Source: Squalus acanthias (lineage: Eukaryota). From it: a stretch of 64,000 bases of DNA. Position numbers and translations under genes: made by a program. The DNA lies in contig CM059430.1 of assembly GCA_030390025.1 (NCBI GenBank), positions 67,456,001-67,520,000 on the forward strand, in the 5' to 3' direction. Of this stretch, positions 16,227 through 61,442 are shown piece by piece. Each line of letters opens with the position of its first letter. Positions within the stretch are counted from its first letter, which is position 1. The notes beneath the pieces are model-generated. The model was not told where the DNA came from and searched no databases. It saw only the letters and a program-made list of their open reading frames with translations.

Positions 16227-16449
16227 CTACACATGAAAGCTTAATGTAAATACGTTTCTGAAAACAGGTTCATACCGGATGTATTGTTTGCATTATTTTG
16301 AAGAAAGTACGGCATCCAGTGAGTTCATGAATGTTTGTGCCCATATTGGTGCGTGTTCAAATGTCTGGGTCACAATATAATAAACGAAATTGGCTCAAAG
16401 CTTGTCATCCATGCCAAGTGTCATTGTAGTAGGGAAAGTCAACTTTAGC

Positions 16450-21490: not shown

Positions 21491-21545
21491 ATGTTTTTTG
21501 GCGCAGTATTTCGACATATAAAGTTGCTCGCCATTATTTACGCAG
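21491..21545 (+). CDS. VJ-C1 IgSF receptor, exon 1 (leader)
   Basis: gaaaATG; MFFGAVFRHIKLLAIIYA; phase-1 donor CAG|GTATAT; 118-nt pyrimidine-rich intron; joins in frame to AAVDA-QIKV (plausible signal cleavage site). Confidence 0.7.
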
Positions 21546-21663
21546 GTATATATCCCACCACTCCCTTTCTCCCTCCCATCTCTCAATCTCCCCCACCTCT
21601 CTCCCTCTCTGTCTCTGGTGCGGTACAATACATCTAAATATTGTTTGCATTTATTCCTCACAG

Positions 21664-21984
21664 CTGCTGTGGATGCTCAGATCAAAGTGTCCCAAACTCC
21701 TGAAAGTGCTCACCGGTTCGTAGGTGGAAACATTACTTTCTATTGCGCGTTTCCTCTTTTTCAAGATAATTCCGATGTGAACATTTACTGGTGGAAACTG
21801 GGCGAAAATGAGTTTCTGCAGTCAGGTTCGGACAGCAGAAAACGATTTCTTCCTTTAAAGAAAGGTGAAGCCTCTTTTCAGCTCCTGAATGTCAACGCCG
21901 CGGACTCTGGAGTTTATTACTGCGGAGTGAAACATCCGGCTAGTAGGATTGCAAATGGAACTGGATCAAATCTTGCAATCTTCG
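21664..21984 (+). CDS. VJ-C1 IgSF receptor, exon 2 (germline-joined VJ-type V-set domain)
   Basis: Acceptor ttattcctcacag, donor G|GTAAGC, phase 1/1; VSQTP...ITFYC...IYWWK...DSGVYYC...NGTGSNLAIF (J-like G-x-G strand in the same exon); no RSS seen. Confidence 0.95.
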
Positions 21985-22344
21985 GTAAGCGCATAGTGTA
22001 CCTGAAATTATTCCACAAATAATTCATTACACAGGGTGGCGAGTTTATTTTAATAAGATGTTCAAAGGACCTTGGTTTATGCTTTTTAATGGGTTCAGTA
22101 ACAATCACATTCAATCCTTCCATTCTTCGCATTATAATTAAAAATAATTATCTGCGCCTTATTGCATGCTGGTGTTGCGGGAAATACACTGTGCCTTATT
22201 GAATGCTTGAAGATAAGAGAAAGGAAACTCGGGAGAGATGTACAACAGGCGGCCAATCCACCATCACCCGTTTTACACTATCGCCAACATTTAAAATTAA
22301 CCACAAAGTGCAATTCCATTCATTTGCTGATTGATGAAGAGACT

Positions 22345-22530
22345 GGGGTAAAATTGACTTTTGCCATAGTGTAAAACGAGTGACAGCGTGTTGACAGCCC
22401 GTTTTACACGTCTCCTGGTTTTTATTTCCATTGAAGTAAATAGAAATAAAATCGGGTGGGATGTAAAATGCGGTGCCTGATTCGCTTTCACCCGTTTTAC
22501 ACTATCGCTCAACTTCAAGATCTAATTCAG
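22345..22530. mobile_element. Short palindromic MITE (half copy at about 22225-22303)
   Basis: Starts GGGGTAAAATTGA; arms atagtgtaaaacg and cgttttacactat around the centre atttccattgaagtaaatagaaat. Confidence 0.7.
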
Positions 22531-22910
22531 CTGAGGGCGAAAACGTTTTTCCACCTACAAATTCCTCTCGATGCTTTTCATAAATTCATCATGACATACG
22601 CCATTCTCTTCTGAAAAATTAGATTAGAATGTATCGAAAATGATATTTACAACGAGAAAAATGTTAAGTGCCAAAGTGACACAAGGGCCCTATTGCTTAA
22701 AAATTCATAATATACATCAAATAATAAATATACGTTGCGGCTGGTCGCAGGGATGCATAAATGCATTTTTGAAGTTTTCCTATATTTGCTACTTTCAATT
22801 ACAAGAGAAACATCGGCCAGACCAATCTTTGTACAGCTGTACTATGTGATCACACATAACACCAGAGGAATGCTTACGTCAATGTTCCAATTTCTTCAAG
22901 AAAACACATA

Positions 22911-23672
22911 GGGCCGGATTTTGCTGCAGATTCGCTGATCGTTTTAAGCGTGTAAATCGGACAGCAAATTCCAGTGACAGCACATGCCCAGGTAAACAAG
23001 GAAATCAGAAAGTTGCTGCCCGAGTTAACCTGTTCCTCGAACAGCTTCATTATAACAGTATTTCGCCGAGAGACACGGCATTGAAATATGTGGAAGAGGG
23101 TGCATTTGTTGTACTTATGTAATAGATACCCACTAAACTCGGCCAAAAAAGTTAGAGCTCCTCAATTCCAGTGTAATGATTTCTTTATCGGCGTGATGAC
23201 TATTAATTGCTGCGAAACAACCTCTCTGACACTGAGTATAAACTTTTATACGTGAGCTGTTTCATTCCTTCAGATTTTAATTACTGGAGATTTAAAAAAT
23301 AAAAAAAATATAAATCTTGTTAACTTTTTCGTACTGTTCCTTTCACCTCCTCTCTTAAACCCATCGTTCTCTCTCTTGCTTTACTTCGCTTTCTGTACAT
23401 GATTTGCCATTAAATTAACTATTCTAACTAAACACTCCCGGGTTCAAAATCTGCCGCTGCTCATTAACAATGTTTCAGTCTAATTGGTTAAGGAAATGCA
23501 CAGTTGCTTGCCGTGTTCACACAGTTACCAGATCCACTGTAGAGGGTGCTGCGTGAAAATGTCTCACATCACGGTAAATTCCATGCAAATTCCCATAGAA
23601 AGCCTGTGGGTAAGTGTAAGTGTAATGAATGGCTGGTGCCGTTCGTTCGCCGCTGAGATCAAAATCGCTCCC
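22911..23672. mobile_element. Harbinger-type MITE in the V-C1 intron
   Basis: TIRs GGGCCGGATTTTG and CAAAATCGCTCCC; internal homology to 39907-40603. Confidence 0.7.
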
Positions 23673-23705
23673 ACTGTAACATCTCCCATCTCATTTGTAT
23701 TGCAG

Positions 23706-24017
23706 TTCCTCCAATTCCGTTGAGTATAAAGCCCGAATTACCTGAGAATACTCTATCCAGAACTCTAATTATCTTGTGTAAGACGGCTGCTTTTTACCCG
23801 GACATTATCAATATAACTTGGTACAAGGATGGCGTTCGTATTACAACGGGGATAAAGACCATTAAACACCTGAATGGCGAGGGACTGTATGAAATTACCA
23901 GCTTTTTGGAAGCCACAGGATCTGTCCCGAATGGCGATGTTTATACCTGTCAAGTTTCTCACCTCACGCTCAAGATTCCAGTAAATATCACCTGCATTGC
24001 CCCGAATTGGAAAGCAG
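23706..24017 (+). CDS. VJ-C1 IgSF receptor, exon 3 (C1-set domain)
   Basis: Acceptor ttgtattgcag, donor G|GTGAGC, phase 1/1; LCKTAAFYPDIINITWYK...YEITSFL...YTCQVSHLTL. Confidence 0.95.
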
Positions 24018-25740
24018 GTGAGCGAACAATATCCCTTGTTGGGCAATCAAGTGTTCTAAGGTTAACTTTTACAGACTTTTAACAAAAAGAGATACCGCGA
24101 TAAATTACATTAAAATTGACGCCCTTGTTACAATACCCTCCATGACTATGTTCCACTCCGTTAAAATTCAACAGTCCATGAACTTCCTCCCTCCTCTGCT
24201 TCACAACGACGTGTTTCGAGTAAGCACAAGACACTTGATGGTGGTTTATACGGAACAGACTTTATTGATATCTGGTATAAGTGTGCAGCCCAACTAATTA
24301 CGGAGAGTGACTTTTCTGTTTCTCGTTCTATCTTTCGAGCCCTCTGAAGACCATGTTTCAAAGGACATGTCGAATAAGGAACTCATGACGTATCTTTTCC
24401 TCAATCCTTTGAAAACAGTCTATTTATGTACATCGTTGTATTTTTTGTACGCCAAAGCTACTTTCCTCAAACAAGACTTCTTGACTTAACAATTCTCGAA
24501 TTCTTCGAAGGGTAGGATTTATTAATCGTTATCTTTCTATATTCTAGTTAATGGATCCTTCTACCTATGCTTGTTACCCTAGTCACTAACGTTATACCTT
24601 AATCACTGATGGTTGAGGTAATTATTGTCACTTATTTCCTTGCGCAAGCATTTCTTGTATATTACGCTCAGACACTAACAGGAGAAGACAAGCTATGCTT
24701 TACTCTCACGGCACTTCAAAGCTATCCTGTTTAGCTTGGAAAGTCAGTTGCTCTAAGAGGAAAGGAAATTTAATTGTTTTCAATTAACTCCCCAAGGTTT
24801 CCAACATACCGCTCTCCAGGATGTGCAACACACTCATCATTTGAAACTTCTCCAGTCTTACCTACCAGTTCGCCTCTCTCCGATCTGATGTGTAACACCC
24901 GGTCACTGGGCTTCATGTTCAGTGGCATATAATTCACGCAACGGGCTCCTTCACTTGGAAATCTTTTTCGCAAATCCTCTCCCAAACCTAATTTCCCTCC
25001 ATATTATACAAACTTCCAGAAAATATACATTCTGGCCCACCTCGTGATAAGAAAAGAAAAATGTCTACACAGAACGATTTGCGAAGTGCATTTATTAATT
25101 ATGTAGAATAATCAAAATTAGATAATTCCAGCATTTCTATTGACGGCCCGATTCTATGCTCTGTGAAATATATACATATGAAATGATTTACTGTGCAACT
25201 GTAGTTCTCAGATTAATTAAGAACACTTCACTCTACTATAAAAATAAAACAATAGAAATATTTCACATTGCAAAGGAAAAACATATAATCAGGCAACTAT
25301 TAAATGTTTCTTCTGCTATACCGAGGTGAAATTAAAGAGGATAAACATTTTTTTCTCTGGAACATAATTACATTTGTTTTAGACCCAGTGAACCCAGTAA
25401 AGCGCGGAGCGTAAAGCAGTTTCTGGCATTATGTGAACAATCTGATGAGTTCATGTGGTCAGATTTCTAGTGATGAACCTTTCAATACTTACTTGCATAG
25501 GTTACCAAACTTTCGTTTTTTCATGTTTCCTATAATAGAAACTGAGCCCTGGAACAGAAACAATTTGTTTTATTATTGTATCTAATCTCGTTCTTCCTAT
25601 TGTAGTTTACCACACTGCGATTGAGAATTAATTTATTTCACTCTTGTTCCTGATTCGTCTATTTATTTATTTCAAGTGATTGTAGTTAGAGCATGCAACC
25701 TATAAACATACATCATTCGTGCGTATTTCATACATTTTAG

Positions 25741-25853
25741 GTTTCGCTCACAGATTCTCCGTTTTTCTGATTCCTCGGTTTGTATTGGGCTTTCTGGTGA
25801 TTGTCGTGCTGACGATTATCATTGTGGACCATTGCAAATCAGCGCCCATTTAA
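25741..25853 (+). CDS. VJ-C1 IgSF receptor, exon 4 (transmembrane segment with Arg, short tail)
   Basis: Acceptor catacattttag, phase 1; GFAHRFSVFLIPRFVLGFLVIVVLTIIIVDHCKSAPI*; donor GTAAG 2 nt after the stop; total CDS 801 nt = 266 aa. Confidence 0.85.
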
Positions 25854-27246
25854 TGGTAAGACGATTTCTTATTACAGTCCATGTGGTAGAATTGTCGCGG
25901 TTCACCCGATTTCCCGTCGTTAATTTGTCCGAAACCCTGGAGATACGCCGTAGATGATTCAAGTACATGATTCTTTCAACGCGGAATTCCCTACCCTATA
26001 TTTATTGGTTTTTATATTAGATTGGTGGCATTCACAGATAAATCACGGGACTACAGCTTGCATACTGCAAATTATGTATTGTCAGATCAGCTGATGATCA
26101 ATGACTACAATAATTGTCATATTTTAAAATATCAGTCACCTGTGGAATATTCTACACATGTATACTATTGATAAACGGTGCATTGGATCTATTACAGTAA
26201 AATCTTAGTAGTTCAGTTCGTAATTTCTATCCCGAGCCTTATATTTTGAGACACTGCTGCCCTTTCATTCTTTACCGCAGTTTGTCAATGAGATACTTAT
26301 TATTGCGATGGTTTTGCACCTGATATCAAACAGAGCCATTCCCGCAGATAGAATTGGAAGGGTTGATTACCTTCCTTTTAAAGTGGTGTTGTATTCAACA
26401 AGCCTTGCAGATTGTTTACAGCAAGTCGTTCAAGTGGAAGGTTCTATTCTAAACTTGAAAATATGCATGGCAAATTCACCGAATCTTTAAAGACGGGATT
26501 TCATGTTATTTGTAAAATATTTTACATTGTATTATAGCAAAATAGATATAGGTTATCCTTATTAAATAATGTGAGGAAGAAAGTGGAAATGATATGAGGA
26601 GATGTTCATTTAGTCTAATTCGTTCTCTGTTTCTAAAATAGCAGGAAATCAATTTTAATATAATAATCCATGGTTACTCTTTACAAGAGGCTTGAACAGT
26701 TTAATGTAGCCCCAAAATGACAAATCCGCACAATGGTTTAATCTGGAAAATCAATGAATGGGGGAGGGGATTTACTCTGTAATGTATGTTGCGAAGTTGT
26801 AAACGAATTTATGCCAAAGGCACAGAACAATTCTCTCTCGCTCCAGTGTTTTCACAGCTCTTAGTGCAATTCAGCAATTGAAATCCTGCAGAATAATGTG
26901 TTCGTCGTGTGTAGATATGGTTTAGAGGCATTTAAAGTTTATTGATGTCCGATTAATTCCAACAGCTTGTCAATATCCATATAATTAAAAGCTGTTTAGT
27001 GATAAAGCAGGTACGAACTATAGAGAAACTGATATTACACCCATGAAAAATCATAATTTACTCTAATTCTGGAACACATATTTATAATTAAATATAATTG
27101 CAACAACATATGTAACATAAATTAAGTGTGATTCATTGACAGAAAAAGTAAAAGTTATTTACTGAAACGTGTTATGTATAAAAAGACAAGAAAAGTAGCA
27201 GTGGGTGAAAATAACACAAATTCTAAGCCGTTTTTCTTTGTTGTAG

Positions 27247-27284
27247 ATCTTGTTGCAACATCTGAGACTTTATCTGACTTGTAA
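27247..27284 (+). other. Candidate terminal (cytoplasmic or 3' UTR) exon of the IgSF gene
   Basis: Strong acceptor tttttctttgttgtag; in phase 1 reads DLVATSETLSDL*. Confidence 0.35.
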
Positions 27285-27599
27285 AGCTGGAGATTCTATC
27301 GCCTTCAAGATAACAAATTGGAAGATTGAAATTCGTGCGTTGCCACCTGGGAAAAGATGCAGCTAATCTGAAAGCAGATTCTACGTGTAACATAAAATTT
27401 ACTAAAATATTGAAAAAAGTGAAGATACTTGTTAAAACAATTTGTCATATTTTGTGCACATTTCTTTCTTCCGTTTTTCTTATTGAGTTATTGATGTGGT
27501 TAATTTTCTTGTTTTTAAAAAATTTGTAAATCATTATATTTGTTTTTTTTCTTAAGTATGGAAACTATTATGTCAGCATTTCTGTTTATTTTCTGAAAG

Positions 27600-27906
27600 C
27601 CGCTGAAGTAACTTCGATCAATATGGATCAATTCCCGAAATACATTAAGGTTGCCAAGAGTACAAATGTTTCCATGTTCTGAACATGTCCCATATTTCAA
27701 GATGCCCCCGATGTTTATTGGCGGAGATGGGGCGAGGAGACTTTTCTGGAGCCAGACAAAAGAAAGCAATTTAATGTCAAAAAAGGAAAGTGGTTCATTT
27801 GATCTCCTGAATGCGAGTGTCGCCGACTCCGGAGTGTATTACTGTCAAGTAAAACATAATCAAAAATCTATTGGAGATGGAAGTGGCTCCCAGCTTGCTG
27901 TGTACG
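27600..27906 (+). pseudogene. Paralogous VJ-type V exon, pseudogene
   Basis: Acceptor ttttctgaaag, donor G|GTAAAT; AAEVTSINMDQFP...VSMF*TCPIFQD...VYWRRWGEETFL...KKG/SGSFDLLN..ADSGVYYCQVKH...GDGSGSQLAVY; TGA at 27680-27682 replaces the B-strand Cys; +1 frameshift near 27787. Confidence 0.9.
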
Positions 27907-27974
27907 GTAAATGTCATTGTGACGGGGAGTGGGAGATTCTCAGCAGTGTGCGATATATGTAAAACTCAATAGTG

Positions 27975-28130
27975 GGGGTAATTTGAACTTTTATCACTTG
28001 ACGAAAACCAGGTGATAGCAAATTCGTTTTACACTTTTCCCGATTTGCTTTTCCATTGACTCCGGTGTACAACGGCCTGCCGATTCACTGGCGCACGGTT
28101 TGCACTACTGCCCCAGCTCAATTTCACCCC
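27975..28130. mobile_element. Short palindromic MITE
   Basis: TIRs GGGGTAATTTGA and TCAATTTCACCCC; centre ttccattgac. Confidence 0.65.
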
Positions 28131-29119
28131 TTCATTGTCCGCATGACATTCCAAAGTGCTTTGCAGCCAATTAGTTCTTTTGGAAGTGCAGTTAAAATTA
28201 TTAAGGATGCAAGATACTGAAATATTATAAATGTTTAAATCTTGGTTTGAAATTAATTGTTTTTCACACGAAGCTCTATTTGGTGCGTTTTGTGGAGATA
28301 GGGTGTACATTCGTGTTTACGTGTAGTTCGCTGAGTGAAACTGATATGGATGGCCGTCTTAGATATTGCACAACTTATTGTAATGAAAACGAGTATTATT
28401 CTAGCTGAATATATTTTTTCGGAATTATGTTTACCTTATTCCTTTGCGTGGCAAAAGTTAATATTAATTGGTTGCGTTTTATTGTGCTTGATATATGTAA
28501 TATTATTATTCCTTGAACCGTTTCAACGGCAAATAATTGTTAAAGTAAACTTATGCATTGTGTTCATCATCCTGACTTTTATTCGAAGAAAGAAATCTTG
28601 CATGATATTATATGACGATTATAACATCTTAAATCGCGGAATTACTTACCTACTCTGGTCTACGCAACGTAGTTTAAACTAGCCGAGGTTACAGCTTACA
28701 CAACTCGCTGCTTTCCATTATACCCATTTTCTGAAGTTTTGGATCCTGGTGTTTTCTTGGTTAAATTGTTTCAATAGTGGAGCTTAATTAAAATTGAAAG
28801 TTAAGAATTAAAGAAGGTAATGTGGAGGGTCCCGCGGGGGAGCGACTAGATATCCCGTTCTGAGATTTGAAACATTTAAAGCACATTGCAATGTATTGTT
28901 GATGATGGATGTGATGGGTTTGGATATAATATTGAATAAAACTTTAAAGACCCTCTTGCCGATGTCAACGGGTTTTAACTTAGCTCGCGGTTAGTAAAAT
29001 GCTTCGCATTAACAACAAATAAAATAAACCGATTTTATAACATGAACCAAGAGTGTGCCAGTTTTGCCAGCTCCTTGTAGCTCTCAGAAAAGATTGTGCC
29101 CTGATCAATGAATGGAATT

Positions 29120-29800
29120 AAATTCGAAGGAGACTGCGGCTGTGTTGTGACCTGTTATTGTAATGTCTGCACTCAAGCTAACAGCACACATCTGGAGTCC
29201 TACGTTTGGTGAAGTAAAATTCTGGACTTGAGATCTTATCCGTATTTGTTAGGACTGAAATGGCCCTTGTCTCAACGAAATGGATCTGCAACAAAGTAAA
29301 TATCTTCTGCAGCTTGATGAACAATCTCGTCCTAAGATTTCTCATCCATATGAGCAGGCATTGGATGAGACTGGTTGGCTGTCCCACGTATTGTGCGGTC
29401 CTCAGAAAGAGCAAAATTATCAGAGTCCATTCCTCCATGCCACCAGTCCTGGGCTATCGTCCCACATGGTAAATCTATGTAGAAAAACAGCTTTAATGTG
29501 AGATGATTCTCTATATCCGAGCCATAATCATTTGCAGGCTGGAAGAGACGGCATACTCCAACATGTCACCGGGGCCTGCTAATGCATCTGTTGGACCATC
29601 CATGGATGAAGCACAGATTAACCTGAGGGTCTCTGTCCATGGAGACGCCACTGCCAATCTCCTTGGAAAAGACCTGTGTTCCGAGGTATGCTGAAGTCCT
29701 GTAAAGCCATGTGTCACGGTTCACATCCTGCAGATAGTGCAATCCTCTAATGTAGCTGGAATCGGCAGCACACTGAAACGTTGCCCAAATGTTACACATA
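29120..29800 (-). mobile_element. Possible very old Harbinger transposase relic
   Basis: Weak remnants (VETRAISVL, TPDVCC, downstream cacaac) in roughly the expected order. Confidence 0.3.
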
Positions 29801-30099
29801 CACTTGATTTTGCATAAGCCTCATTCCTTTAAAGCAGGTACTTTGTAAAAAAAAATATCTCGCGCTCTCAAAATGAAGGGCAATGTTTCCTGAGCCGCCA
29901 CTTAACTTTTACCTTCACATTTTCATTGCCGGGTACTCCTTTTGGAAAGGCTATTACGGAATTATAATAGACGTGAGCACAGAACTCCACTCGCAATGGT
30001 TTGTGCAAGGAACCTCCAGGACCAATAAAGAGGATAGATATGGACTGTTAGTTACTGAAGATTAATTGGTTCAGAGTGGTAATTTTGAGGAAAGGGTGA

Positions 30100-31800
30100 T
30101 GGCAACAATTTGGAAGTTGGGGAAATAATATCTGCAATAACCGATCCATTAACAATATCGGAGAGCAGTAAGGAAAAGAACGTCAATTGTCCATTGGTTA
30201 GTGCGAGAAAATGGAACTCATGGAGGAGATAAGAATAATCGCTGGGAGAGATGAGAGAAGGGGTACAGAGTGCCAAGCGGTCAGATAGAAATAACATCGG
30301 GATTGGAGAAGTCTACGGATAGGTCTACATGCTTGTAACACTTGTGCTGACATAGGGAGTAGGGTGTCAGGGGTAGTACAGAATGAACTTTTGAGCAAGG
30401 CAACAGAGGCAGCAGTGTCATACAGCATAAAGGGCCAGGAGAGAGGGGATTTGGAATAAAAAAGCGTTTTTCCCGAGAAGAGGAAGAATTTTGTCCCAGG
30501 TCGGTAAGGGTAATGCGATTGGGTGTAGGAGGGCGATGTTGATAGTGATGGGGATGAAAAAGTGATCCACATTGTATATCACATCCTCTGGCAAAGAAAA
30601 TTTGCCGTATCAATAGGTCGAGGAGCTCAATAGATCAGATTGGGCAAGTTGATATGCAGCATCGGGATGAATCATAGAATCATGCAACACAGAAGGCATC
30701 CATTGGACCGTTGTGCCTGAGTCAGCTCTTTAAAAGCGCAATCCAATTTACTCCCACGCTCCAGCTATTTGCCCATAAGCCTGCAAACCAGTCCTCTTCT
30801 CCATCAAAGCCCGACATAATTTTGAATACTTCTACTACATCTCCACTTAACCTTCTCTGCTCCAAGGAGAACAATCGCAGCTTCTCCAGTCTATCTGCAT
30901 AACTTAAGTCCCTCCCCCATTGTACCATTCTAGTAAATCTCCTCTGCATCCTATCTAAGACCTCTATGTACCCATATGCATTTGTACCACATTATCAACT
31001 TATGCTGCCACCTTCAAAGATTTGTGAATATGTACCCCAAGGTCTCTCTGCTCTTGCACCGTCCTCAAAATAGTACAATTTAGACTATACTACTTCTCCA
31101 AGTTGTCCCTCCCAAAGTGCATTGAGCGAGGACAGTAGGACAGACGGATCAGAGGAGGACAAAGACGTGAAATTCGACAATTGTTCAATTCAACACAGAA
31201 TAAGTCTTTCTCAGTGTAACTGCAAAAGGAGGAGAAAAGTAAGTGACCATGGGAAAAATCATCACGGAGCGGCAGATGGCGATAGACAATGAGGACATTA
31301 AAAAAAAGGTGACAAAGTAGAAAAGGTACTTTATTGAACAGGAAAACTGAAGCAAGAATAAGGGAAAGATTAACACAGCATGTGATGACCGGTACTGCTT
31401 CGGGCAGGAGCATTGTGGAACACGTAGTCAGGTGAGGTGGCTTTGATGAATTGAATGATTTCACGGCCAGTTACCCAGATTCTAAGCAGGTTGAACATGT
31501 TAACAGCTTCACTCGAGTTGGGGTCACGGACTGGATCGGCCTTGTGCACATGTAAATGGAAATTTCGGAGGGTGGTATGTTCAGTGAAGATTCGCGCGTT
31601 AGTATCGTCAAATGGGACAGTGGTAGTGGCAAAATAATCCCTAGGGAATCAATTTCGGGAATCTTTAACGGGAGTGAGGAGTTGGGAGGAGCCAGCGACG
31701 TATGTTGTGTTCGACACAGTACAATGCACCTAACACAGAGCAGAGGGCAGCTGTGGGCCCGCCAGGAGAGGATCGAACCAGGAATGAGGGCAGGAGATCA
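30100..31800 (-). mobile_element. Old L2 ORF2 endonuclease region, interrupted by CR1
   Basis: Minus strand IKATSPDYVFHNAPARSSTG resembles the L2 APE segment; C/T-rich coding strand; boundaries approximate. Confidence 0.5.
30670..31125 (-). mobile_element. CR1 3' fragment
   Basis: MQRRFTRMV...LSYADRLEKLRLFSLEQRRLSGD. Confidence 0.85.
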
Positions 31801-32779
31801 CGTTGGACATAAGTGTGCGTAAGGAAATGTAGAGCGTCACTTCACCAAAGACCCATATGTGGTGAATGTGAGTAATACGGGCAAGTCTCGAGCAGATGAG
31901 AGATTTAGAGGCTTCGGGGCAGTACAGAGAGGCTCCTCCCAGCGAGATTGGCGGGTGAGGGGAAAGTCTGATGCTGCAGGACCAGTTTCCACGCTAACTT
32001 ACAGGAAAAGTTATGAAACGAAGTCCTCTGTGGGGGTTTCCGAAATCGATCTAAGACTAAGAAAATAATTAGGTAGCCAACTGCTCAGGCCTGGCTTAAT
32101 TTTCCTGTCCAGGTACGATATAACTGCTTCAGACAGAGGTTGGAGATTATGCGGAACAGTCTAATCACAGAGGTAGTGGTAGATATTATCAATTTTAACT
32201 CCGTGTTGGGTAATTTTTTTAGGCGACAGCTCAATTGAATATTGCGCAAAATGAGGGATATAGCCTTTGGAACTTGCCTATGAAGGGGAATGGTATATTC
32301 TTCTCCTGCAAAATTATGTTCATATATGTAAGGAACTTAAGTAGATTACATGAGACGTCATCAGTAACCATCTTTTCTGCAGCTTTTGCAGAATGATAAC
32401 TCAGAATTTCCTAGAATTTTATAGAATTACGTAGAATGTACAGCACAGAAAGATAAAATTCGATCCATGCTGGTGTTTATGCTACATACGAGCCTCCTCC
32501 CAGCCCTTTCATCCAACCCTATCAAATACGATTAGCAAGTTATCTTCTTAATGGGAATGCTGCATTGTGCCTGCGTGGATTTGTATGGGTGCATTAAGTG
32601 GGTTACATAAGTAGGTCGCACGGTTTTTAACGAGTAAACATTGTTTACTGTAGCTTGTTCAGAATGATCAATTCATAAAATTTTCGAGCACTAAACGATG
32701 GCTTTCGGCCCAACTCCTGGTGGCGGCTCTCTGAAAGACCTGTCCTCTTAGGGCGATTTCCCTCCGCTTTAGTGGGTTC

Positions 32780-34990
32780 CATAAGAACATAAGCAATACG
32801 AGCAGGAGTAGGCCATTTGGACCTTCGAAGCTGCTCCGACAATCAATAAGATCATGGCTGATGTTCTACTTCATCTGCACTTTCCTGCATTATCCCCATA
32901 TCCCTTGATTCCCTTAATATTCAAAAATCTATCGATCTCTGTCTTGAATATACTAAACGACTGAGACTCCACAGCCTTATTAGGTTAAACATTCCAAATA
33001 TTCGCCACCCTCTGAGTGAATAAATTTCTCCTCATCTCAGTCCAAAATCCCCGACCCCTTATTCTGTGAAATGTGACTCCTGGTTTTAAAATCCCCAACC
33101 AGGGGAACCATCCTCCCTGCATCTACCCTGTCAAGTCATGTAAGAATTTTGTATGTTTCAATTAGAACACCTCTCATTCTTCTAAACTCTAGAGAATATA
33201 GGCTTAGTCTACTCAATCTTTCCTCATATGACAATCCCTCCATCCCAGGAATCAGTTTGGTGAACCTTCGTTGCACTCCCTCTGTGTCAAGTATAACCTT
33301 TCGTAGGTAAGGAGAACAGAACTGTACACAGTACTCTAGGTGTGGTCTCACCAGGGCCCTATATAGTTGCAGAAAGACGTATTTACTCTTATACTCAAAT
33401 CCTCTTGTAGTAATGGCGAACATACCATTTGCTTTTCTAATTGCTTGCTGTACCTGCATGTTAACTTTCAATGATTCGTGTACAAGGACACCCAGGTCCC
33501 TCTGACCACCAACATTTCCCAATCTCTCACCATTTAAAACTTTGCTTTTCTATTTTTCCTACTAAGGTGGATAACTTCACATTTCTCGACATTATATTCA
33601 ATTTGCCATGTTACTGCCCACCTGCTTAGCATGTCTATATCCGCTTGAAGCTTCCTTGCATCCTCCTCACTACATACATTCCCACCCAGCTTTGTATCAA
33701 CAACAAACTTGGATATATTACATTTGGTCCCCTCATCCAAATTATTGATGTAGATTGTGATTAGCTGAGGATTTAGCACTGATCCTTGGGGTACCCCACT
33801 AGTTACAGCCTGCCAACCCGAAAGCAACCCGTTTATTAGTACACTCTGTTTTCTGTCCGTTAACCAATATTCAAACCCATGAGCCATAATTTTGCTTAAT
33901 AACCTCTTGTATGGCACCTTATCAAATGCTTTCTCAAAATCCAAATGCGCCACATCTACTGTTTCTCCCTTATCTATTCTGATAGTTACAACCTCAAAAA
34001 CTCTAACAGATTTGTCCAACACGATTTCCCTTTCAAAAATCCGTGTTGACTCTGCCTAATCCAATTATTATTTTCTAAGTGCCCTGTTACCATGTCCTTA
34101 ATAATTGATTCGAGCATTTTCCCTGCGACTGATGTCAGGCTAACTGGTCTGTAGCTCCCCGTTTTCTCTCTCCCTCCATTCTTAAAGAGTGGGGTTATAT
34201 TTCCCAGCTTCCAATCTTCGGGAAACATTCTGGAATCTATGGAATTTTGGAAAATGACAACCAACGCATCTACTATCTCTACAGCCACCTCTTTCAAAAC
34301 CCTAGGATGTAGGCCATCTGGTCTACGGGATTTATTGACTTTCAGTCCCATTAATTTCTCCAGTACTACTTCTTTACCAATGCAAATAACTTTCAGTTCC
34401 TCATTCGCGCTAGAGTCTGGGTTCTCCTCTATTTCTGGAAGTTTTTTGGGTCATCTCCCTTGAAGCCAGACAAAAAGTATTGGTTTAATTTATCTGCCAT
34501 ATCCTTATTCCCCATTATAGTACCCCCGGTCCCTGCCTGGAATGCACCCACATTCACTTTTGCTAATCCTTTCCTTTTTCCATACCTATGGAAGTTTTTA
34601 CAGACTGTTTTTATGTCTCTCGCTAGTTTACTCTCATATTCAATTTCCTGATTTATAATCGGCCCTACATTACAACTAATATTTGGAGGCCTATAAAGAA
34701 TTCCCATCAATGCATTCTGCCCCTTGCTGTTTCTTAGCTCTACCCAAACTGATTCTACTTCTTGATTTTCGGAGCTAAGATCCTTTCTCAATACTGTCTT
34801 TATCCCATCCTTTATTGACAGGACTACAGGTCCTCATTTTCTATTTTGCCTATCTCTTCTAAAAGTTAAGTATCCTGGAATATTTAGTTCCCACGCACTA
34901 TTAATTCATTAATTTTGTTGCGAATGCTTCGAGCATTTCAGATATAGTGCCTTTAGCTTTGAATTATTTATTTTTCCTGATGTCACCTTA
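32780..34990 (-). mobile_element. CR1 ORF2 (endonuclease to RT) plus 3' UTR, frameshifted
   Basis: [58 protein letters not shown]. Confidence 0.93.
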
Positions 34991-42871: not shown

Positions 42872-44825
42872 ATCATAGAAACATAGAAGATAGGAGCATG
42901 AGCAGGCCATTCAGCTCCTCGATCCTGCTCTGCCATTCAATGAGATCATGGCTGATCATCCAAATTCAGCACCCTGCCCCTGCCTTCTCTCCATATCCCT
43001 TGATCCCTTTAGCTTTAAGAAATATATCTAACTCCTTCTTGAATATATTTAATGATTTGGCCAATACTGCCTCTGTGGTAGAGAATTCCACAGGTTTACC
43101 ACTCTCTGGGTGAAGAAATTCCTCCTCATCTAAGTCGTAAATGGCTTACCCCTTATCCTTAGACTGTAACCCCTGGTTCTGGACTCCCCGGCTATCGGGG
43201 ACATCCTTCCTGCATCTAGTCTGTCTAGTCCTGATAGAATTTTATAAGTTGCAATGAGATCCCCTCTCATTCTTCTAAACTCCAGCGAGTATAAGCCCAA
43301 TCGACCCAATCTCTCCTCATACGTCATTCCTGCCATCCCAGGTATCAGCCTGGTGAATGTCCGCTGCACTCCCTCCATGGCAAGAACATCCTTCCTCAGA
43401 TAAGGCGACCAAAACTGCACACAATACTCAAGATGTGGTCCCACCAAGGCCCTGTACAACTGCAGCAAGACATCCTTGTTCCTGTACTCGAACCCTTTCG
43501 CTATGAAGGCCAATATACCATTTACCTTCTTAACCATCTGCTGCACCTGCATGCTTACCTTCAGCGACTGGTGCACAAGGACACCCAGGTCTCGTTGCAC
43601 TTCCCCTTCTCCCAATCTATTGCCATTCAGATAATAATCTGCCTTCCTGTTTTTGACACCAAAGTGGATAACCTCGCATTTATCCACATTATATTGCATC
43701 TGCCATGCTTCTGCCCAATCATCCAAACTGTCCAATTCATATTGGAGTTTCTTGGCATCCTCCTCACGGCTCACACTCCCACCCAGCTTTGTGTTGTCTG
43801 CAACCTTGGAGATATTACATCCAATTCCCACGTCTAGATCATTAATATATATTGTAAATAGCTGGGGTCCGAGGACTGTTCCCTGCGGTACCCCACTAGT
43901 CACTGCCTGCCACTCGGAAAAAGACCCATTTATACCACAATTTGCTTCCTGTCTGCCAACCAGTTCTCTATCCAAGTCAATACCTTGCCCTCAATCCCAT
44001 GTGCCTTAACTTTACACCCTAATCTCTTATGCGGGACCTTATCGAAAGCCTTCTGAAAGTCCAAATACACCACATCCACTGGTTCTCCCTTATCTATTTT
44101 ACCAGTTACATCCTCAAAAAATTCCAGTAGATCAGTCAAGCACGATTTACCTTTTGTAAATCCATGTTGACTTTGTCCGATCCTGTCACTGTTTTCCAAG
44201 TGCTCTGCTATTACATCTTTTATAATGGACTCTAGCATTTCCCCCACTACCGATGCCAGGCTTACCGGTCTATAAATCCCCGTTTTCTCTCTACCACCTT
44301 TTTTGAATAGTGGGGTAACATTAGCTACCCTCCAATCCATGGGTACTTTTCCAGAGTCTATAGAATTTTGGAAGATGACCAGCAATGCATCTACTATTTT
44401 TAGAAGTCGCACAACTCCAGGTTATAATCCAACAGCTTTATTTGAAATCTCAAGGTTTCGGAGCGCTGCTCCTTCATTTCAAATAAAGCTTTTGTACTAT
44501 AACCTGGTGTTGTGCGACTTCTCACTTTTGTCCACCCCAGTCCAACACCGGCATCTGCACATCCTGGCTACTATTTTAAGGGCCACTTCCTTAAGTACCC
44601 TAGAATGTAGATTATCAGGCCCTGAGGATTTATCGGCCTTCAATCCCGTCAATTTTCCTACCACTATTTCCCTACAAATACTGATTTCTTTCAGTTCCTC
44701 CCTCTCATTAGACCCTATGTTCCCCGACATCTCTGGGAGGTTATCTGTGTCCTCCTTTGTGAAGACAGAACCAAAGTATGTATTTGATTGTTCTGCTATT
44801 TCTTTGTTCCCCATTATAAATTCCT
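42872..44825 (-). mobile_element. CR1 ORF2 RT region plus 3' UTR (same subfamily as 1-953)
   Basis: ORFs 43130-43975, 43930-44412 and 44497-44877 carry standard CR1 RT motifs. Confidence 0.95.
44401..44567. mobile_element. Fold-back Penelope terminal-repeat insertion with 10-bp TSD
   Basis: CTACTATTTT at 44391-44400 and 44568-44577; inverted arms 44402-44448 and 44476-44522; homologous to 38742-38860. Confidence 0.85.
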
Positions 44826-58844: not shown

Positions 58845-59202
58845 GGGGGGAAAATTAGGTCGCGCCCCGTTTGGGGCGCAAATATCGTCTGGACGCAAAT
58901 ATTAGCGCCTGGTGCTAATTATCGCCACTGACTGGAAACTTCACTTTTACCGCCCCGGGAGGTGAGTGGAGCACTAAATCAGGCGCTGCACATCTGTCTT
59001 AAGGCGCAAAGGCCGAGCAGTGAGGCGCTAACTCAGTGCGCGAGCGCAGCACAGGTGCTGCCAGTTAGCGAGGGAACACAGACACACTGGCGCCGGCCAG
59101 TTCTTAAAGCGGGGGGGCCAACTTGCTCCCCAGCCACACCCTGCTCATTGCAGCCTTGAATCTCGGCCTGGAGAGACCTGTGAATCCATTTTGCTGCCAA
59201 GG

Positions 59203-61130
59203 ATGGAGAGGGTGAGAGAACGAGCTCAGCGCTTCACCGAGCGGGCCTTGGATGCTCTGGTTGGTGCGGTGGAGCGCAGAAGATGTATACTCTTCCCTGA
59301 GAGTGGCAGGAGGCCTTTGCCACGCGAGTACAGAAGAGTGTGGAGGGAGGTGGCTCAGAGCGTCTCCTCCAGGAGCATGGTGCCCAGGACCCATGTTCAA
59401 TGCCGCAAAAAGTTCAACGACCTCACTCGGGTCGTCAGGGTGAGTGGCTTTTTCTCAATACCTCTCCATCCCTCCATCTCAACCTCACTCTATGGCCAGA
59501 GGGTCTTAAAACCCCAATGCACAACACTCATCCAACACCTATGGCCCTTTCATGAAACACACACACACATTCCACACTTTGCATACATTAAGGGCTATTC
59601 ACCTATGGGAGGCACATCAGGCAAGACCATGGCTGTATACAGTAAGGGCTATTCACCTATGGGAGGCACATCAGACAAGACCATGGCTGTATACAGTATG
59701 GGCTATTCACCTATGGGAGGCACATCAGGCAAGACCATGGCTGTATACAGTAAGGGCTATTCACCTAGGGGAGGCACATCAGGCAAGACCATGGCTGTAT
59801 ATTTACTCAGATGCTGTCCTTTTTCTTGCAGGCCAAGCTGGCGCATAATAGGAGACAGCAGCAACGGACAGGTGGAGGGCGGCCTCAGCTGCAACCCTGC
59901 AGCGATCTTGAGGAGCGCGTCCACAGGATTGTGGCAAGCCGGGTGATCGGTCCCGTCGCCACTGGAGACGCCGACCCCGTTCTGGACAGCAATGGTAAGG
60001 TCATCACCTTTTTGTTCACTGTCCTTCCACTTGTCCCTCACAACACCAGCCTTTGACACTTTCAATCCAACTTGCTAACTCGCTGCACTTATTCCTCCCT
60101 TACTGCCACCCTGTCCTCACGCTAAAGCCACTCTTGTACCTCCCTGCTTTCAGATGGTGATTCACCAGCTGAGGAGACGGGCCCTGAAGCTGCCAGTGGG
60201 AGTGAAGCTGCAGCCGAGGAGGAAGAGGAAGCCGGAGCATCAGTGCCACCCTCTCCCGAGGAAGCCCATGCCCACACTGGGAACACGCCTTCCCTGGAGG
60301 GGAGCAGGGGGGAAGGGTCTGATGAGGGTGAAGCTCCAGGACCCAGTGGGCTGCAGCAACGCCAAGGGGGTAGGGAAGAACGGGGGCCTTCTCCCCAGAG
60401 GGAGAGTATGCCAGCGACTCCTACTGCAGTGGACGCAGAGGAGGAGCGGCTGATCACAGAAATGAACACCCAGGCGGTGGGCATGCACACTGAGCTCATG
60501 GGTGCAGTGGGAAGGGTGCCCGAATGCATTGAGTCACTGGCAAGGAGTGTGGAGCACTTCGCTGTAGCACAGGCGGATGCCACACTAACGCTTAGTGCTG
60601 CAATTCAGTCACTGACTGCCGTGATCCCATCTCTGACTGCTCTCATGCAGACTCAGATTGAGGCCACGCGAGCACTGACTGCTGCCAACCTCGATGGTTC
60701 GTTCACATGTCCCCGGGGCTCTCACCGCGCCGCAGCAGGCCAGCAATCTGTGCTCCAGCAGATTGCTCCGGATGCTGAAGTGCTGCCCCGTGGGAGTGCC
60801 AGTGTGTCGGACGAGCAGGGAGCTGCTGTCCTCTCTCACGATGACAGCATTCCTGCTGCCAACACTGTCACTTCTCCACTGCACTTGCCACCGCCTGTAG
60901 GACAGACTGCTGCCGCCCATGCAGAGTTGGTGCAGTCTGCATTCGGGCCCTCCAGGCCCAGAACTAGTCGAGGCCATCCTTCAGGGGCATCTGCAGAGTC
61001 AGGGTCTGACGATCAGCAGCCTTCCACCAGCCTTGCTGCAGCCACTGAGGTCCCATTACGGAGGAGCAGTAGGGTTAGAAGGGGGGAAGTGCGCAAGGGA
61101 AGGAGATCACCCTCGAAGGGCAAAAAGTAG
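59203..61130 (+). CDS. Harbinger Myb/SANT-like DNA-binding protein, 3 exons (59203-59439, 59832-59994, 60154-61130; 458 aa)
   Basis: RFTERALDALV...WREVA...RTHVQCRKKFNDL | AKLAHNRR..RTGGG; GT-AG introns in phases 0 and 1 give an open 1377-nt frame. Confidence 0.88.
59589..59801 (+). repeat. 54-bp minisatellite, about 4 copies, in intron 1 of the Myb gene
   Basis: taagggctattcacctatgggaggcacatcaggcaagaccatggctgtatacag at 59589, 59643, 59697 and 59751. Confidence 0.95.
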
Positions 61131-61442
61131 GAGGTGTGACAAAATGCTGGTCATTTTTTTATTAAAGGTCGTGGTTCGTGGTCCAACTTTTGTCTAGTGT
61201 TTTGGACATTATCTCCAGGTTGTGAGAACCAGTTATGTTAATGACTGTTTTTTTGTGTTTATTTCTATGAGTTTGTCATGAGGAAATGACACACACAGAG
61301 TTTGTAAAATAAATAAGTTTTTGTATTCAAAATATACATGTTTGGTGTTTGGAATCATTGGTGCCTTGGCCGGCTTAGGGGTTGCGTGCTGGGTTCATTG
61401 ATGTTGTTAGCAATGGCAGAAGCCATTTCCACAGCAGGGGCC

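What the first reader, a model, noticed from the sequence alone, without database searches (positions are those of the whole stretch)
21491..25853. Intact non-rearranging, TCR-chain-shaped receptor: leader, VJ, C1, Arg-containing TM
Seen: four phase-1 exons splice to an open 266-aa protein. The V exon already contains its J-like strand (YYC...NGTGSNLAIF) and has no RSS, and it is followed by a true C1-set domain (CxxxxFYP..I.ITW, YTCQVSH). Established: C1 domains are largely restricted to Ig, TCR, MHC, B2M, tapasin, SIRP and some B7-family proteins. Germline VJ domains typify NKp30/NCR3, CD8B and the VJ-C1 genes discussed as possible antigen-receptor precursors. Inference: this is a cartilaginous-fish member of a poorly characterised innate receptor family with the architecture expected before RAG-transposon invasion. 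It is the best candidate for an undescribed system in this window.
Basis: partly seen in the sequence, partly recalled or inferred. Interest (0 to 1): 0.85.

Follow-up and report, generated by a model that had tools for sequence, protein, structure and literature searches.

The report
Shark activating-type VJ-C1 membrane receptor gene
This is an intact four-exon shark gene for a small antibody-like surface receptor that needs no gene rearrangement, the short-tailed, probably activating member of a large and so far unstudied receptor family found in sharks, rays and chimaeras.

Summary
Four GT-AG, phase-1 exons on the + strand encode leader, V domain with a built-in J-like strand, C1-set domain, and a transmembrane segment with an 8-residue tail (801 coding nt, 266 codons). 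No RSS heptamer lies at the V exon's 3' end.

It is not an orphan. Both Ig exons nest in a clade of six short-tailed proteins from galeomorph sharks (V 96/82, C1 100/99 support). That clade sits in a V-C1-TM family seen in 16 chondrichthyan species, which RefSeq names inconsistently (SIRP-alpha-like, NCR3LG1-like, tapasin-related-like, Ig-lambda-like). Many members carry long tyrosine-motif tails. The window gene and several others carry a conserved R-x16-[D/E]-H transmembrane cassette and almost no tail.

Best reading: the adaptor-coupled, activating arm of a paired inhibitory/activating family, SIRP-beta-like in logic but with one C1 and a compact, VNAR-sized V. No specific affinity to SIRP, TCR, IgL or UrIg could be shown.

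Expression is untested: no listed run held the exons. I found no paper on this family in the held library. First-stage notes, unchecked, report similar genes elsewhere in this genome.

The parts
21491..21545 (+). Exon 1: start codon and most of the signal peptide (18 codons + 1 nt; split leader, phase 1)
   Evidence: ATG in context GAAAATGT, donor GTATAT. Homologous in position and sequence to the leaders of P0004, P0154 and P0155.
21664..21984 (+). Exon 2: end of leader plus V domain with a built-in J-like G strand (Cys27...Cys86 of the exon translation)
   Evidence: (V-set 1.3e-08). AF2 model has pLDDT 87 with the G strand broken at G-T-G. Clade with six shark orthologues, support 96/82.
21954..21980 (+). 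J-like motif NGTGSNLAI inside the V exon; its NGT is an N-glycosylation sequon
   Evidence: N97 and G100 are invariant and G98 and T99 at least 90% conserved in 13 family V domains. This strand aligns to the J-encoded strand of TCR-beta and IgL chains (profile positions to 101-102 of 103).
23706..24017 (+). Exon 3: C1-set domain plus short stalk; extra Cys codon at 23993-23995
   Evidence: C1-set 1.1e-13; C-13-W, FYP, CQVSH. Clade with six orthologues, support 100/99.
25741..25853 (+). Exon 4: juxtamembrane, transmembrane segment with Arg (25776-25778) and Asp-His (25827-25832), short tail, stop TAA (25851-25853)
   Evidence: best 21-23-residue hydrophobic windows include the Arg; motif R-x16-D-H; 80% identity over 30 residues to Mustelus P0153.
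27584..27906 (+). Neighbouring V pseudo-exon of another family member. A stop codon (27680-27682) stands where the first canonical Cys should be, there is a +1 frame change near 27780-27790, and the GTAAG donor is kept
   Evidence: 60-81% identical to Heterodontus P0158 and P0042. No C1, TM or tail exons of it were found in the window.

Best explanation
The locus is a functional-looking gene for a type I membrane protein: signal peptide, one compact V domain with a germline J-like strand, one C1-set domain, a short stalk, a transmembrane helix and a tail of about 8 residues.

It is the orthologue of a conserved, short-tailed gene of galeomorph sharks. It belongs to a chondrichthyan-wide multigene family whose other members have the same ectodomain plan but long cytoplasmic tails with several tyrosine motifs.

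I read it as the activating arm of a paired-receptor family. In this reading the V domain binds a ligand as a single domain. The ligand is still unknown and is probably conserved, because V is as conserved as C1 or more so. The receptor cannot signal by itself. Its membrane-embedded Arg in the outer third, with a conserved acidic-His pair at the inner end, recruits an ITAM-bearing adaptor of the FcR-gamma / CD3-zeta / DAP12 kind. Inhibitory relatives would oppose the signal through their tyrosine-motif tails.

Shown: gene structure, domain types, family membership, orthology, conservation of the transmembrane cassette, and the existence of long-tailed relatives.

Inferred: expression, adaptor coupling, activating function, single-domain ligand binding and cell type.
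For: Structure and domains.

Family:
- 76 of 177 stored proteins have adjacent V and C1 domains like the window's.
- 24 of the 30 proteins looked up by name are chondrichthyan; the other six were four turtle multi-V proteins and two unnamed short contigs.
- So are 10 of 10 and 24 of 24 hits.

Orthology:
- The window's V and C1 each form a clade with P0004, P0152, P0153, P0154, P0155 and P0156, against 70 other rows. Support (ultrafast bootstrap/SH-aLRT) is V 96/82 and C1 100/99.
- Identity to these six is 60-75% in V and 58-67% in C1. BLAST aligned the TM exon to five of the six, at 57-87% over 15-32 residues.

Paired design:
- The long-tailed members checked carry repeated x-Y-A-x-[LT] motifs, e.g. 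P0003, P0013, P0031, P0038.
- Short-tailed charged-TM members lie next to long-tailed ones in four separate parts of both trees: P0005 with P0008, P0083 with the P0158 group, P0069 with P0097/P0108, and P0175/P0176 with P0047.

Transmembrane cassette:
- R-x16-[D/E]-H occurs in the window and in 7 distinct stored clusters from different V/C1 clades.
- The 16-residue hydrophobic core is too short to span a bilayer without burying a charge.
- The best 19-, 21- and 23-residue hydrophobic windows all contain the Arg.
- AF2 of the orthologue P0004 gives one continuous helix over residues 225-258.

Tail: the few residues after the Asp-His pair contain no tyrosine.

The pairing of a basic-TM, short-tailed SIRP-beta with DAP12 against an ITIM-bearing SIRP-alpha is established knowledge (PMC12975943, passages).
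Against: - No transcript evidence. No listed run held the stretch. The three small runs laid covered only intronic repeats and no exon.
- The Arg is not invariant: Chiloscyllium P0154 has Gln there. The acidic residue is Val in the two Scyliorhinus orthologues.
- The Arg lies close to the outer boundary, so it could be a mere flanking residue.
- Whether this shark has FcR-gamma, DAP12 or CD3-zeta with a matching Asp was not examined.
- My ITIM regular expression found only 0-3 strict ITIMs per long tail, so 'inhibitory' for the relatives is also an inference from motif type.
- V is more conserved than C1 in 5 of 6 orthologues. That is unusual for pathogen-driven activating paired receptors.
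Confidence: 0.6

Rival explanations
1. A non-signalling family member: a decoy or adhesion molecule like SIRP-gamma, or a B7/butyrophilin-like ligand, as RefSeq's name 'NCR3LG1-like' for the orthologue P0004 would imply. It would present its V domain to a receptor on another cell and need no adaptor.
For: - The tail is minimal and without motifs.
- The Arg is replaced by Gln in one orthologue.
- The two-domain model of P0004 superposes best on B7-H6 (Z 16.9, rmsd 4.4, 190 aligned), PD-L2, B7-H3 and butyrophilins.
- With the V-only profile, PD-L1 is the best single-V chain in the PDB (42.4 bits).
- SIRP-gamma is a precedent for a short-tailed member that does not bind DAP12 (PMC12975943, passages).
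Against: - All Z values lie within about 1.5 of each other and depend on inter-domain geometry.
- The PD-L1 alignment stops at profile position 90 and misses the J-like strand. TCR-beta and IgL align to positions 101-102.
- The C domain meets all three C1 hallmarks. PMC2785349 says CD80 d2 lacks the conserved sequence patterns.
- The R-x16-[D/E]-H cassette is kept in 7 distinct clusters across separate clades. That is hard to explain without a partner inside the membrane.
Confidence: 0.2
2. One chain of a dimeric, antigen-receptor-like complex. It would be a non-rearranging TCR-like chain that pairs through V and C1, and in this species a stalk cysteine, with itself or with another VJ-C1 chain, and that assembles with CD3-like subunits through its transmembrane charges.
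For: - The topology is V-C1-stalk-charged TM-short tail.
- Foldseek's 500 best PDB matches for the orthologue model P0004 all had E<=0.001, and the about 50 rows shown are Ig light chains.
- There is a Cys just after the G strand of C1 (codon 23993-23995), at a place comparable to the interchain Cys of light chains and TCR chains (recalled).
- C1 domains are reported always to associate with another domain (PMC2785349, passage).
- UrIg2 is a disulfide-linked homodimer (PMC12227049, sections 7 and 12).
Against: - The stalk Cys is absent from all 6 orthologues, which have Phe there.
- The position of the J-segment interface Phe/Trp is an invariant Asn inside a conserved N-x-[ST] sequon. A glycan there would obstruct the CC'FG-face pairing.
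- The C strand reads YWWK, not the WY(R/Q)Q that I recall for antigen receptors.
- The V is compact and resembles VNAR and NCAM d1, which act as single domains.
- No partner gene lies in the window.
Confidence: 0.12
3. An intact-looking but silent gene, on its way to the fate of its neighbour at 27.6 kb.
For: - No RNA evidence.
- The adjacent family V exon is a pseudo-exon with a stop and a frame change.
- The locus is surrounded by transposon remains.
Against: - All four exons are open, and all six splice sites are canonical with pyrimidine-rich acceptors.
- Every invariant family residue is kept.
- The terminal branches are the shortest or among the shortest in the clade (0.08 for V, 0.17 for C1). 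That is the opposite of relaxed constraint.
Confidence: 0.08

Closest known systems
SIRP family (SIRP-alpha, -beta, -gamma) of mammals
   Same: - Non-rearranging V domain with a J-like strand followed by true C1-set domain(s).
- A paired design: tyrosine-motif tails in some members, and a basic transmembrane residue with a minimal tail in others.
- RefSeq names many long-tailed family members 'tyrosine-protein phosphatase non-receptor type substrate 1-like'.
- The whole-ectodomain family profile hits SIRP-alpha 2wng at 4.2e-31 across V plus its first C1.
   Different: - One C1 exon instead of two.
- Arg near the outer boundary plus an inner Asp-His, instead of the Lys I recall for SIRP-beta.
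- The V is shorter, with 58 residues between the cysteines.
- With the V-only profile no SIRP chain is among the 60 best PDB hits.
- A search with a long tail alone found only Callorhinchus proteins.
- Orthology to SIRP was neither shown nor excluded.
UrIg and UrIg2 (elasmobranch non-rearranging antibody-like genes; PMC12227049)
   Same: - Elasmobranch genes with a single-exon VJ, a split leader and C1-type domains. UrIg2 also has a transmembrane region.
- UrIg2 (9dmx) is the best non-antibody PDB hit of the C1 exon and of the C1 profile (8.9e-17; 97.8 bits).
- V at least as conserved as C among species is also reported for UrIg.
   Different: - Nurse shark UrIg2 has 9 C domains and the epaulette shark model 11 (PMC12227049). 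The gene here has one.
- The UrIg2 score is summed over three C1 domains.
- Nothing in the sections and passages I read describes paired inhibitory and activating forms for UrIg or UrIg2 ('ITIM' occurs 0 times in the main text).
T cell receptor chains
   Same: Leader, V(J), one C1, short connecting piece, transmembrane segment with a basic residue, and a tail of a few residues. The J-like strand aligns to TCR-beta J (7ndt_EEE, profile positions 4-102, 41.8 bits).
   Different: - No RSS and no separate J.
- An invariant glycosylation sequon stands in place of the interface Phe.
- The V is compact and lacks a clear C''.
- The stalk Cys is not conserved.
- About 15-22% identity to TCR V domains in the structural alignments.
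IgNAR V domain (VNAR) and I-set domains such as NCAM d1
   Same: Best structural matches of the window's V model: NCAM d1 at Z 14.6, rmsd 1.9, 96 aligned; skate VNAR 8ht3 at Z 14.6, rmsd 2.0, 98 of 104 aligned, 24% identity. Both are compact single domains.
   Different: VNAR is made by rearrangement and sits on five C1 domains (recalled). The Z values of TCR V-beta, PD-1 and CD79b are within 1 (tied).
B7 / butyrophilin family (B7-H6 = NCR3LG1)
   Same: V-C two-domain ectodomain. Best two-domain superposition: B7-H6 at Z 16.9. RefSeq calls three family members 'NCR3LG1-like': the orthologues P0004 and P0153, and P0068.
   Different: J-like G-x-G strand; all C1 hallmarks met; Pfam C1-set 1.1e-13 against C2-set_2 2.4e-04; charged transmembrane cassette.

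Membership tests
Chondrichthyan V-C1-TM family (RefSeq models named SIRP-alpha-like, NCR3LG1-like, tapasin-related-like, Ig lambda-1-like and others) | V domain with the family signature (Q-x-P, YWWK-x-GE, DSGVYYC, NGTGS-x-L-x-V) | tested here: met
   All 14 invariant columns of alignment A2 are present in the window's V exon. V is 60-75% identical to six orthologues.
Chondrichthyan V-C1-TM family (RefSeq models named SIRP-alpha-like, NCR3LG1-like, tapasin-related-like, Ig lambda-1-like and others) | A single C1-set domain directly after V, encoded by its own phase-1 exon | tested here: met
   76 of 177 stored proteins show the same V-C1 adjacency.
Chondrichthyan V-C1-TM family (RefSeq models named SIRP-alpha-like, NCR3LG1-like, tapasin-related-like, Ig lambda-1-like and others) | Nests inside the family in trees of each domain | tested here: met
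   The clade with six short-tailed shark proteins has support V 96/82 and C1 100/99. No rows were left out of the 77. The trees contain family members only, with no outgroup.
Short-tailed (activating-type) subgroup of that family | Transmembrane cassette R-x16-[D/E]-H and a tail without tyrosine | tested here: met
   found in the window plus 7 distinct stored clusters. Of the six orthologues, 3 have the full motif, 2 keep Arg and His but not the acid, and 1 has Gln for Arg.
SIRP family | V followed by two C1-set domains | tested here: not met
   There is only one C1 exon between V and TM. tblastn of the C1 exon and of 13 family proteins found no second C1 in the window.
SIRP family | Specific sequence affinity of the V domain to SIRP d1 | tested here: not met
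   No SIRP chain is among the 60 best PDB hits of the V exon or of the V profile. The lists are capped at 60, so its rank is unknown.
SIRP family | Paired ITIM-tail and basic-TM members | tested here: met
   Met at family level. The window gene is the basic-TM type.
SIRP family | CD47 binding; DAP12 association through a transmembrane Lys | not testable with these tools
   The residue here is Arg, not Lys. Binding needs experiments.
Rearranging antigen receptors or germline-joined shark IgL | RSS-flanked V and J segments; or, for joined IgL, close identity to IgL V and C with a secreted chain lacking a TM | tested here: not met
   V and the J-like strand are one exon with no heptamer or nonamer. 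A TM exon is present. None of the named best hits is an authentic IgL or TCR; the 'Ig lambda-1 light chain-like' models are 266-337 aa. I inspected four of them (P0008, P0011, P0020, P0152) and all four have the family V-C1 plan with a transmembrane segment.
UrIg / UrIg2 | VJ exon with split leader followed by several C1 domains (9 in nurse shark UrIg2, 11 in the epaulette shark model) | tested here: not met
   The split leader and VJ exon are met, but there is only one C1. The criterion comes from PMC12227049 section 7.
NKp30 / NCR3 | A single VJ domain without any C domain | tested here: not met
   A C1 exon is present. NKp30 V reaches Z 12.7, below 44 other entries.
C1-set domain (as defined in PMC2785349) | 13 residues between the B-strand Cys and C-strand Trp; (F/Y)(F/Y/H)P in the BC loop; x-V-x-H after the F-strand Cys | tested here: met
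   against the criteria read.
PRARP (non-rearranging VJ genes of chicken and other vertebrates, Fu et al. 2019) | Sequence relationship to PRARP-A/B | not tested
   I saw the paper only as a reference-list entry and one sentence in PMC10751288. No PRARP sequence was available from any tool.

The most novel reading that the evidence does not exclude
This orthogroup could be a surviving non-rearranging, TCR-like chain: one V(J), one C1, a charge-bearing transmembrane helix and no tail. Its assembly with ITAM subunits through the R...D-H cassette would preserve the signalling arrangement that rearranging receptors inherited.

According to unchecked first-stage notes, its family sits inside Ig light-chain cluster arrays elsewhere in this genome. 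If that holds, the family would be a third lineage of antigen-receptor relics beside UrIg and UrIg2. It would also make the origin of the TCR/CD3-type assembly experimentally approachable in sharks.
Probability: 0.12. Interest if true: 0.85.

Novelty: new member of a known kind. Interest (0 to 1): 0.55.

Why it matters
Non-rearranging genes with a V(J) and a C1 domain are the material from which immunoglobulins and T cell receptors are thought to have arisen. Only a few kinds are discussed in print: SIRP, NKp30, PRARP, UrIg and UrIg2.

This gene shows that cartilaginous fish also keep a large family with the minimal plan V-C1-TM, split into long-tailed and charged-TM short-tailed forms. At least one short-tailed gene has been conserved as a single orthologue across shark lineages.

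The family is hidden in databases under at least nine unrelated automatic names, so it is easy to overlook. If expression and adaptor coupling are confirmed, it would give:
- a paired-receptor system at the base of jawed vertebrates;
- a test case for how charged transmembrane assembly with ITAM adaptors relates to the antigen receptors;
- a correction to the annotation of many shark, ray and chimaera genes.

Tried and rejected
Germline-joined IgL: rejected. A TM exon is present, the V is only about 25% identical to light chains in the structural matches, and all close relatives are family members.

NKp30: rejected, because a C1 domain is present.

Clear SIRP orthologue: not supported, but not excluded.
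- The V profile does not bring up SIRP.
- The C1 profile list is filled by multi-C1 heavy chains.
- The whole-ectodomain profile ranks SIRP-alpha 7th of 10,850, but behind multi-domain chains only.
- The tail-only search was blank outside Callorhinchus, and a blank there is weak because the tool needs shared 5-residue words.

Outgroups for a real phylogeny (SIRP, TCR, IgL, tapasin, PRARP) could not be obtained.
- The search for homologous proteins returned family members only.
- So the trees say nothing about deep relationships.

Fold searches did not discriminate between families. Ties were within 1-2 Z, and Foldseek's list was saturated by light chains. The ESM Atlas gave only generic V-set clusters.

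RNA evidence:
- The look-up of sequencing runs listed three small runs holding next to none of the words.
- Read laying showed only intronic repeat pieces at 90-95% likeness and zero depth over all four exons. This is no evidence either way.

Relics of tyrosine-motif tail exons downstream of exon 4 (24018-34000): none, all E>0.2.

Other genes in the window: the large ORFs tested are transposon-derived (DDE_Tnp_4, Myb-like, RVT_1) or have no Pfam match. Synteny could therefore not be read from the window.

Papers:
- The UrIg 2023 and Ohta 2019 papers are not held.
- Supplements are closed and I did not ask for them. Gene tables in the supplements of PMC12227049 and PMC10751288 might list members of this family.

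Full report
WHAT IS THERE

On the + strand four exons with canonical GT-AG borders and pyrimidine-rich acceptors lie at 21491-21545, 21664-21984, 23706-24017 and 25741-25853. Their lengths are 55, 321, 312 and 113 nt. All three introns are in phase 1, and the coding length is 801 nt, i.e. 266 codons plus stop. Each exon is open in that frame.

Every search used one exon by reference, or natural database proteins.

- Exon 1 encodes a leader that continues for a few residues into exon 2, a split leader.
- Exon 2 is a V-type domain (Pfam V-set 1.3e-08). In it YYC is followed, in the same exon, by NGTGSNLAIF. No RSS heptamer or nonamer lies in 21900-22100.
- Exon 3 is a C1-set domain (1.1e-13, against 2.4e-04 for the CD80-like C2-set_2). 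It meets the three C1 hallmarks given by Hatherley et al. (PMC2785349, passages read): 13 residues between Cys and Trp, FYP, and C-x-V-x-H.
- Exon 4 encodes a hydrophobic segment with Arg at 25776-25778 and Asp-His at 25827-25832, followed by six residues and TAA.

IT BELONGS TO A LARGE FAMILY

phmmer of the V exon against 1.84 billion representative proteins gave 263 hits at E<=1e-3, 97 at E<=1e-10 and 10 at E<=1e-30.

I looked up the names of 30 of them:
- 24 are from cartilaginous fish;
- 4 are multi-V proteins of turtles, without the V-C1 plan;
- 2 are unnamed short contigs.

All 10 and all 24 hits of two further searches are chondrichthyan.

The 16 species are sharks (Heptranchias, Carcharodon, Cetorhinus, Heterodontus, Mustelus, two Chiloscyllium, two Scyliorhinus, Stegostoma), rays and a skate (two Mobula, Hemitrygon, Amblyraja) and a chimaera (Callorhinchus).

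RefSeq's pipeline gives family members at least nine unrelated names. These include SIRP-alpha-like, SIRP-beta-1-like, NCR3 ligand 1-like, tapasin-related protein-like, Ig lambda-1 light chain-like, CD276 homolog and MHC class II beta-like. That spread shows that no characterised protein is a clear best match.

ORTHOLOGY

In maximum-likelihood trees of the 77 V domains and the 77 C1 domains (no rows left out; family members only, midpoint root), the window's exons each form a clade with the same six proteins: Carcharodon P0004, Cetorhinus P0152, Mustelus P0153, Chiloscyllium P0154, and Scyliorhinus P0155 and P0156.
- Support is 96/82 for V and 100/99 for C1.
- In the quick trees that were drawn, the window is sister to the six.
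- Its terminal branches are short (0.08 and 0.17).
- Identity to the six is 60-75% in V and 58-67% in C1. BLAST aligned the transmembrane exon to five of the six, at 57-87% over 15-32 residues.
- V is more conserved than C1 in 5 of the 6 comparisons.

All six are short-tailed (265-342 aa) and have the same kind of transmembrane segment.

So the gene is a conserved orthologue of predicted but uncharacterised genes. It is not an orthologue of SIRP, NCR3 or IgL.

THE PAIRED DESIGN

Many family members have tails of about 70-150 residues with several x-Y-A-x-[LT] motifs. The window gene and its orthologues have tails of at most about 20 residues.

The motif R-x16-[D/E]-H occurs in the window and in 7 distinct stored clusters: P0004, P0005, P0069, P0083, P0093, P0152 and P0153. 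These lie in separate parts of the V and C1 trees. In four places a short-tailed member lies next to long-tailed ones: P0005 with P0008, P0083 with the P0158 group, P0069 with P0097/P0108, and Mobula P0175/P0176 with P0047.

Sixteen hydrophobic residues are too few to cross a bilayer, so at least one of the charges is buried. The best 19-, 21- and 23-residue hydrophobic windows all include the Arg. AlphaFold models residues 225-258 of P0004 as one helix (mean pLDDT 88).

This is the layout of adaptor-dependent activating receptors such as SIRP-beta with DAP12 (PMC12975943, passages). From memory, an Arg in the outer third is more typical of receptors that use FcR-gamma or CD3-zeta.

Points against:
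- Chiloscyllium has Gln for the Arg.
- The two Scyliorhinus proteins have Val for the acid.
- I could not look for the adaptors.

THE V DOMAIN IS NOT A CANONICAL ANTIGEN-RECEPTOR V

Only 58 residues separate its cysteines. The AlphaFold model of the window's V exon (pLDDT 87) has 14 residues and hardly any strand between C and D. Its G strand is broken at G-T-G, like the bulge of J segments.

Its best structural matches are NCAM d1 (Z 14.6, rmsd 1.9, 96 aligned) and a skate VNAR (Z 14.6, rmsd 2.0, 98 aligned, 24% identity). CD79b, TCR V-beta and PD-1 are within 1 Z, i.e. tied.

With a profile of 13 family V domains, the best single-V chains in the PDB are:
- PD-L1, 42.4 bits, aligned only to profile position 90;
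- TCR-beta chains, 41.8 and 41.0 bits;
- a light chain, 41.1 bits.

The TCR-beta and light chains align through the J-like strand to positions 101-102 of 103. No SIRP chain is among the 60 listed.

The residue where J segments have the interface Phe/Trp is an invariant Asn, within a conserved N-x-[ST] sequon. If that Asn is glycosylated, the V could not pair as VH/VL or TCR V domains do. I therefore favour single-domain binding.

The stalk Cys (23993-23995), which might suggest a disulfide-linked dimer, is absent from all six orthologues.

RELATION TO KNOWN FAMILIES

- A profile of the whole ectodomain hits UrIg2 (1.2e-34, V plus three C1) and SIRP-alpha (4.2e-31, V plus its first C1 in one stretch). 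Only multi-domain antibody chains rank above SIRP-alpha.
- The C1 profile list is filled by heavy chains and UrIg2, whose scores sum several C1 domains.
- Foldseek with the P0004 model returns only light chains in the rows shown.
- The representative-based search puts B7-H6, PD-L2, B7-H3 and butyrophilins first for the two-domain arrangement, all within about 1.5 Z.

None of this singles out one family. The tools gave me no SIRP, PRARP, TCR or IgL sequences to root a tree. I therefore file the gene under the general kind 'non-rearranging VJ-C1 receptors, paired inhibitory/activating type'. It is SIRP-like in logic, with the deep relationship left open.

LITERATURE

Nine text searches found no paper describing this family.

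Flajnik et al. 2025 (PMC12227049; outline, sections 7 and 12 part 1, and passages) treat UrIg, UrIg2 and NCR3 as the non-rearranging genes of sharks. 'SIRP', 'ITIM' and 'PRARP' each occur 0 times in its main text.

Verissimo et al. 2023 (PMC10751288, passages) say that several VJ-C1-type genes are known in tetrapods.

Fu 2019, Ohta 2019 and Flajnik 2023 were seen only as references; the last two are not held. Supplements are closed and may list such genes.

SURROUNDINGS

- At 27584-27906 lies the V exon of another family member, 60-81% identical to Heterodontus P0158 and P0042. It has a stop where the first Cys should be and a frame change. No further exons of it were found in the window.
- A weak V-like trace lies at 16240-16412 (E 0.015).
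- The rest of the window is transposon debris.
- First-stage notes of this scan, all unchecked, report a long-tailed VJ-C1 gene about 17 kb before the window, a SIRP-like paired family 5.2 Mb away on the same piece, and many VJ-C1-TM genes inside Ig light-chain arrays on other pieces.

EXPRESSION

Not shown. No listed run holds the stretch.

VERDICT

The gene is real-looking, conserved, non-rearranging and V(J)-C1-TM. It is a new member of a known kind rather than a new kind. It is one gene of a big, mis-annotated and apparently unpublished chondrichthyan family, and most likely its adaptor-coupled activating form.

Interest is moderate to good (0.55). It would be high if the family proves to be an antigen-receptor relic with TCR-like membrane assembly.

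Noticed in passing
window 27584-27906 (+): V pseudo-exon of a second family member. A stop codon at 27680-27682 replaces the first canonical Cys, there is a +1 frame change near 27780-27790, and the GTAAG donor is kept. It is closest to Heterodontus P0158 and P0042 (60-81%). No C1, TM or tail exons of it were found in the window.
   Followed up: yes
window 16240-16412 (+): Two adjacent weak tblastn matches (E 0.015; 34% and 52% identity) to the second half of the V domain of Heptranchias P0003, ending in a J-like ...GSKLVIH. This may be a decayed family V exon upstream of the gene.
   Followed up: no
window 25851-25861 (+): The stop codon of exon 4 lies 2 nt before a good donor site (TAA TG GTAAGA). 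The short tail may have arisen by a stop just inside a TM exon that once spliced on to tail exons. No tail-exon relic was found downstream (all E>0.2).
   Followed up: partly
window 23993-23995 (+): An extra Cys just after the G strand of the C1 domain, in the stalk. All six orthologues have Phe there, so a possible interchain disulfide would be particular to this species.
   Followed up: partly
stored proteins P0004, P0005, P0069, P0083, P0093, P0152, P0153: The same transmembrane cassette, R-x16-[D/E]-H, occurs in short-tailed members of separate V/C1 clades. This suggests either an old activating exon kept in several lineages or exchange of the TM exon between genes.
   Followed up: partly
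stored proteins P0002, P0007, P0012, P0018: Outside cartilaginous fish, the strongest matches to the V exon are multi-V proteins of turtles (Chelonia, Malaclemys, Carettochelys; cluster members also from Chrysemys and Trachemys), named pIgR-like, titin-like, FCRL5-like or NCAM2. Their repeated V domains align over the whole V, including the J-like strand.
   Followed up: no
orthologues P0004, P0152-P0156 versus window exons: V is more conserved than C1 in 5 of 6 orthologue comparisons (V 60-75%, C1 58-67%). This is the pattern reported for UrIg and points to a conserved ligand.
   Followed up: partly
window 59191-62390: Harbinger-type transposon remains: a Myb/SANT-like ORF at 59191-59946 (+) (Myb_DNA-bind_5, 3.3e-09), whose translation carries an internal tandem repeat, and a DDE_Tnp_4 transposase ORF at 61443-62390 (-) (4.8e-40). 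Reverse-transcriptase fragments lie at 33534-34022 and 43130-44412 (-).
   Followed up: partly
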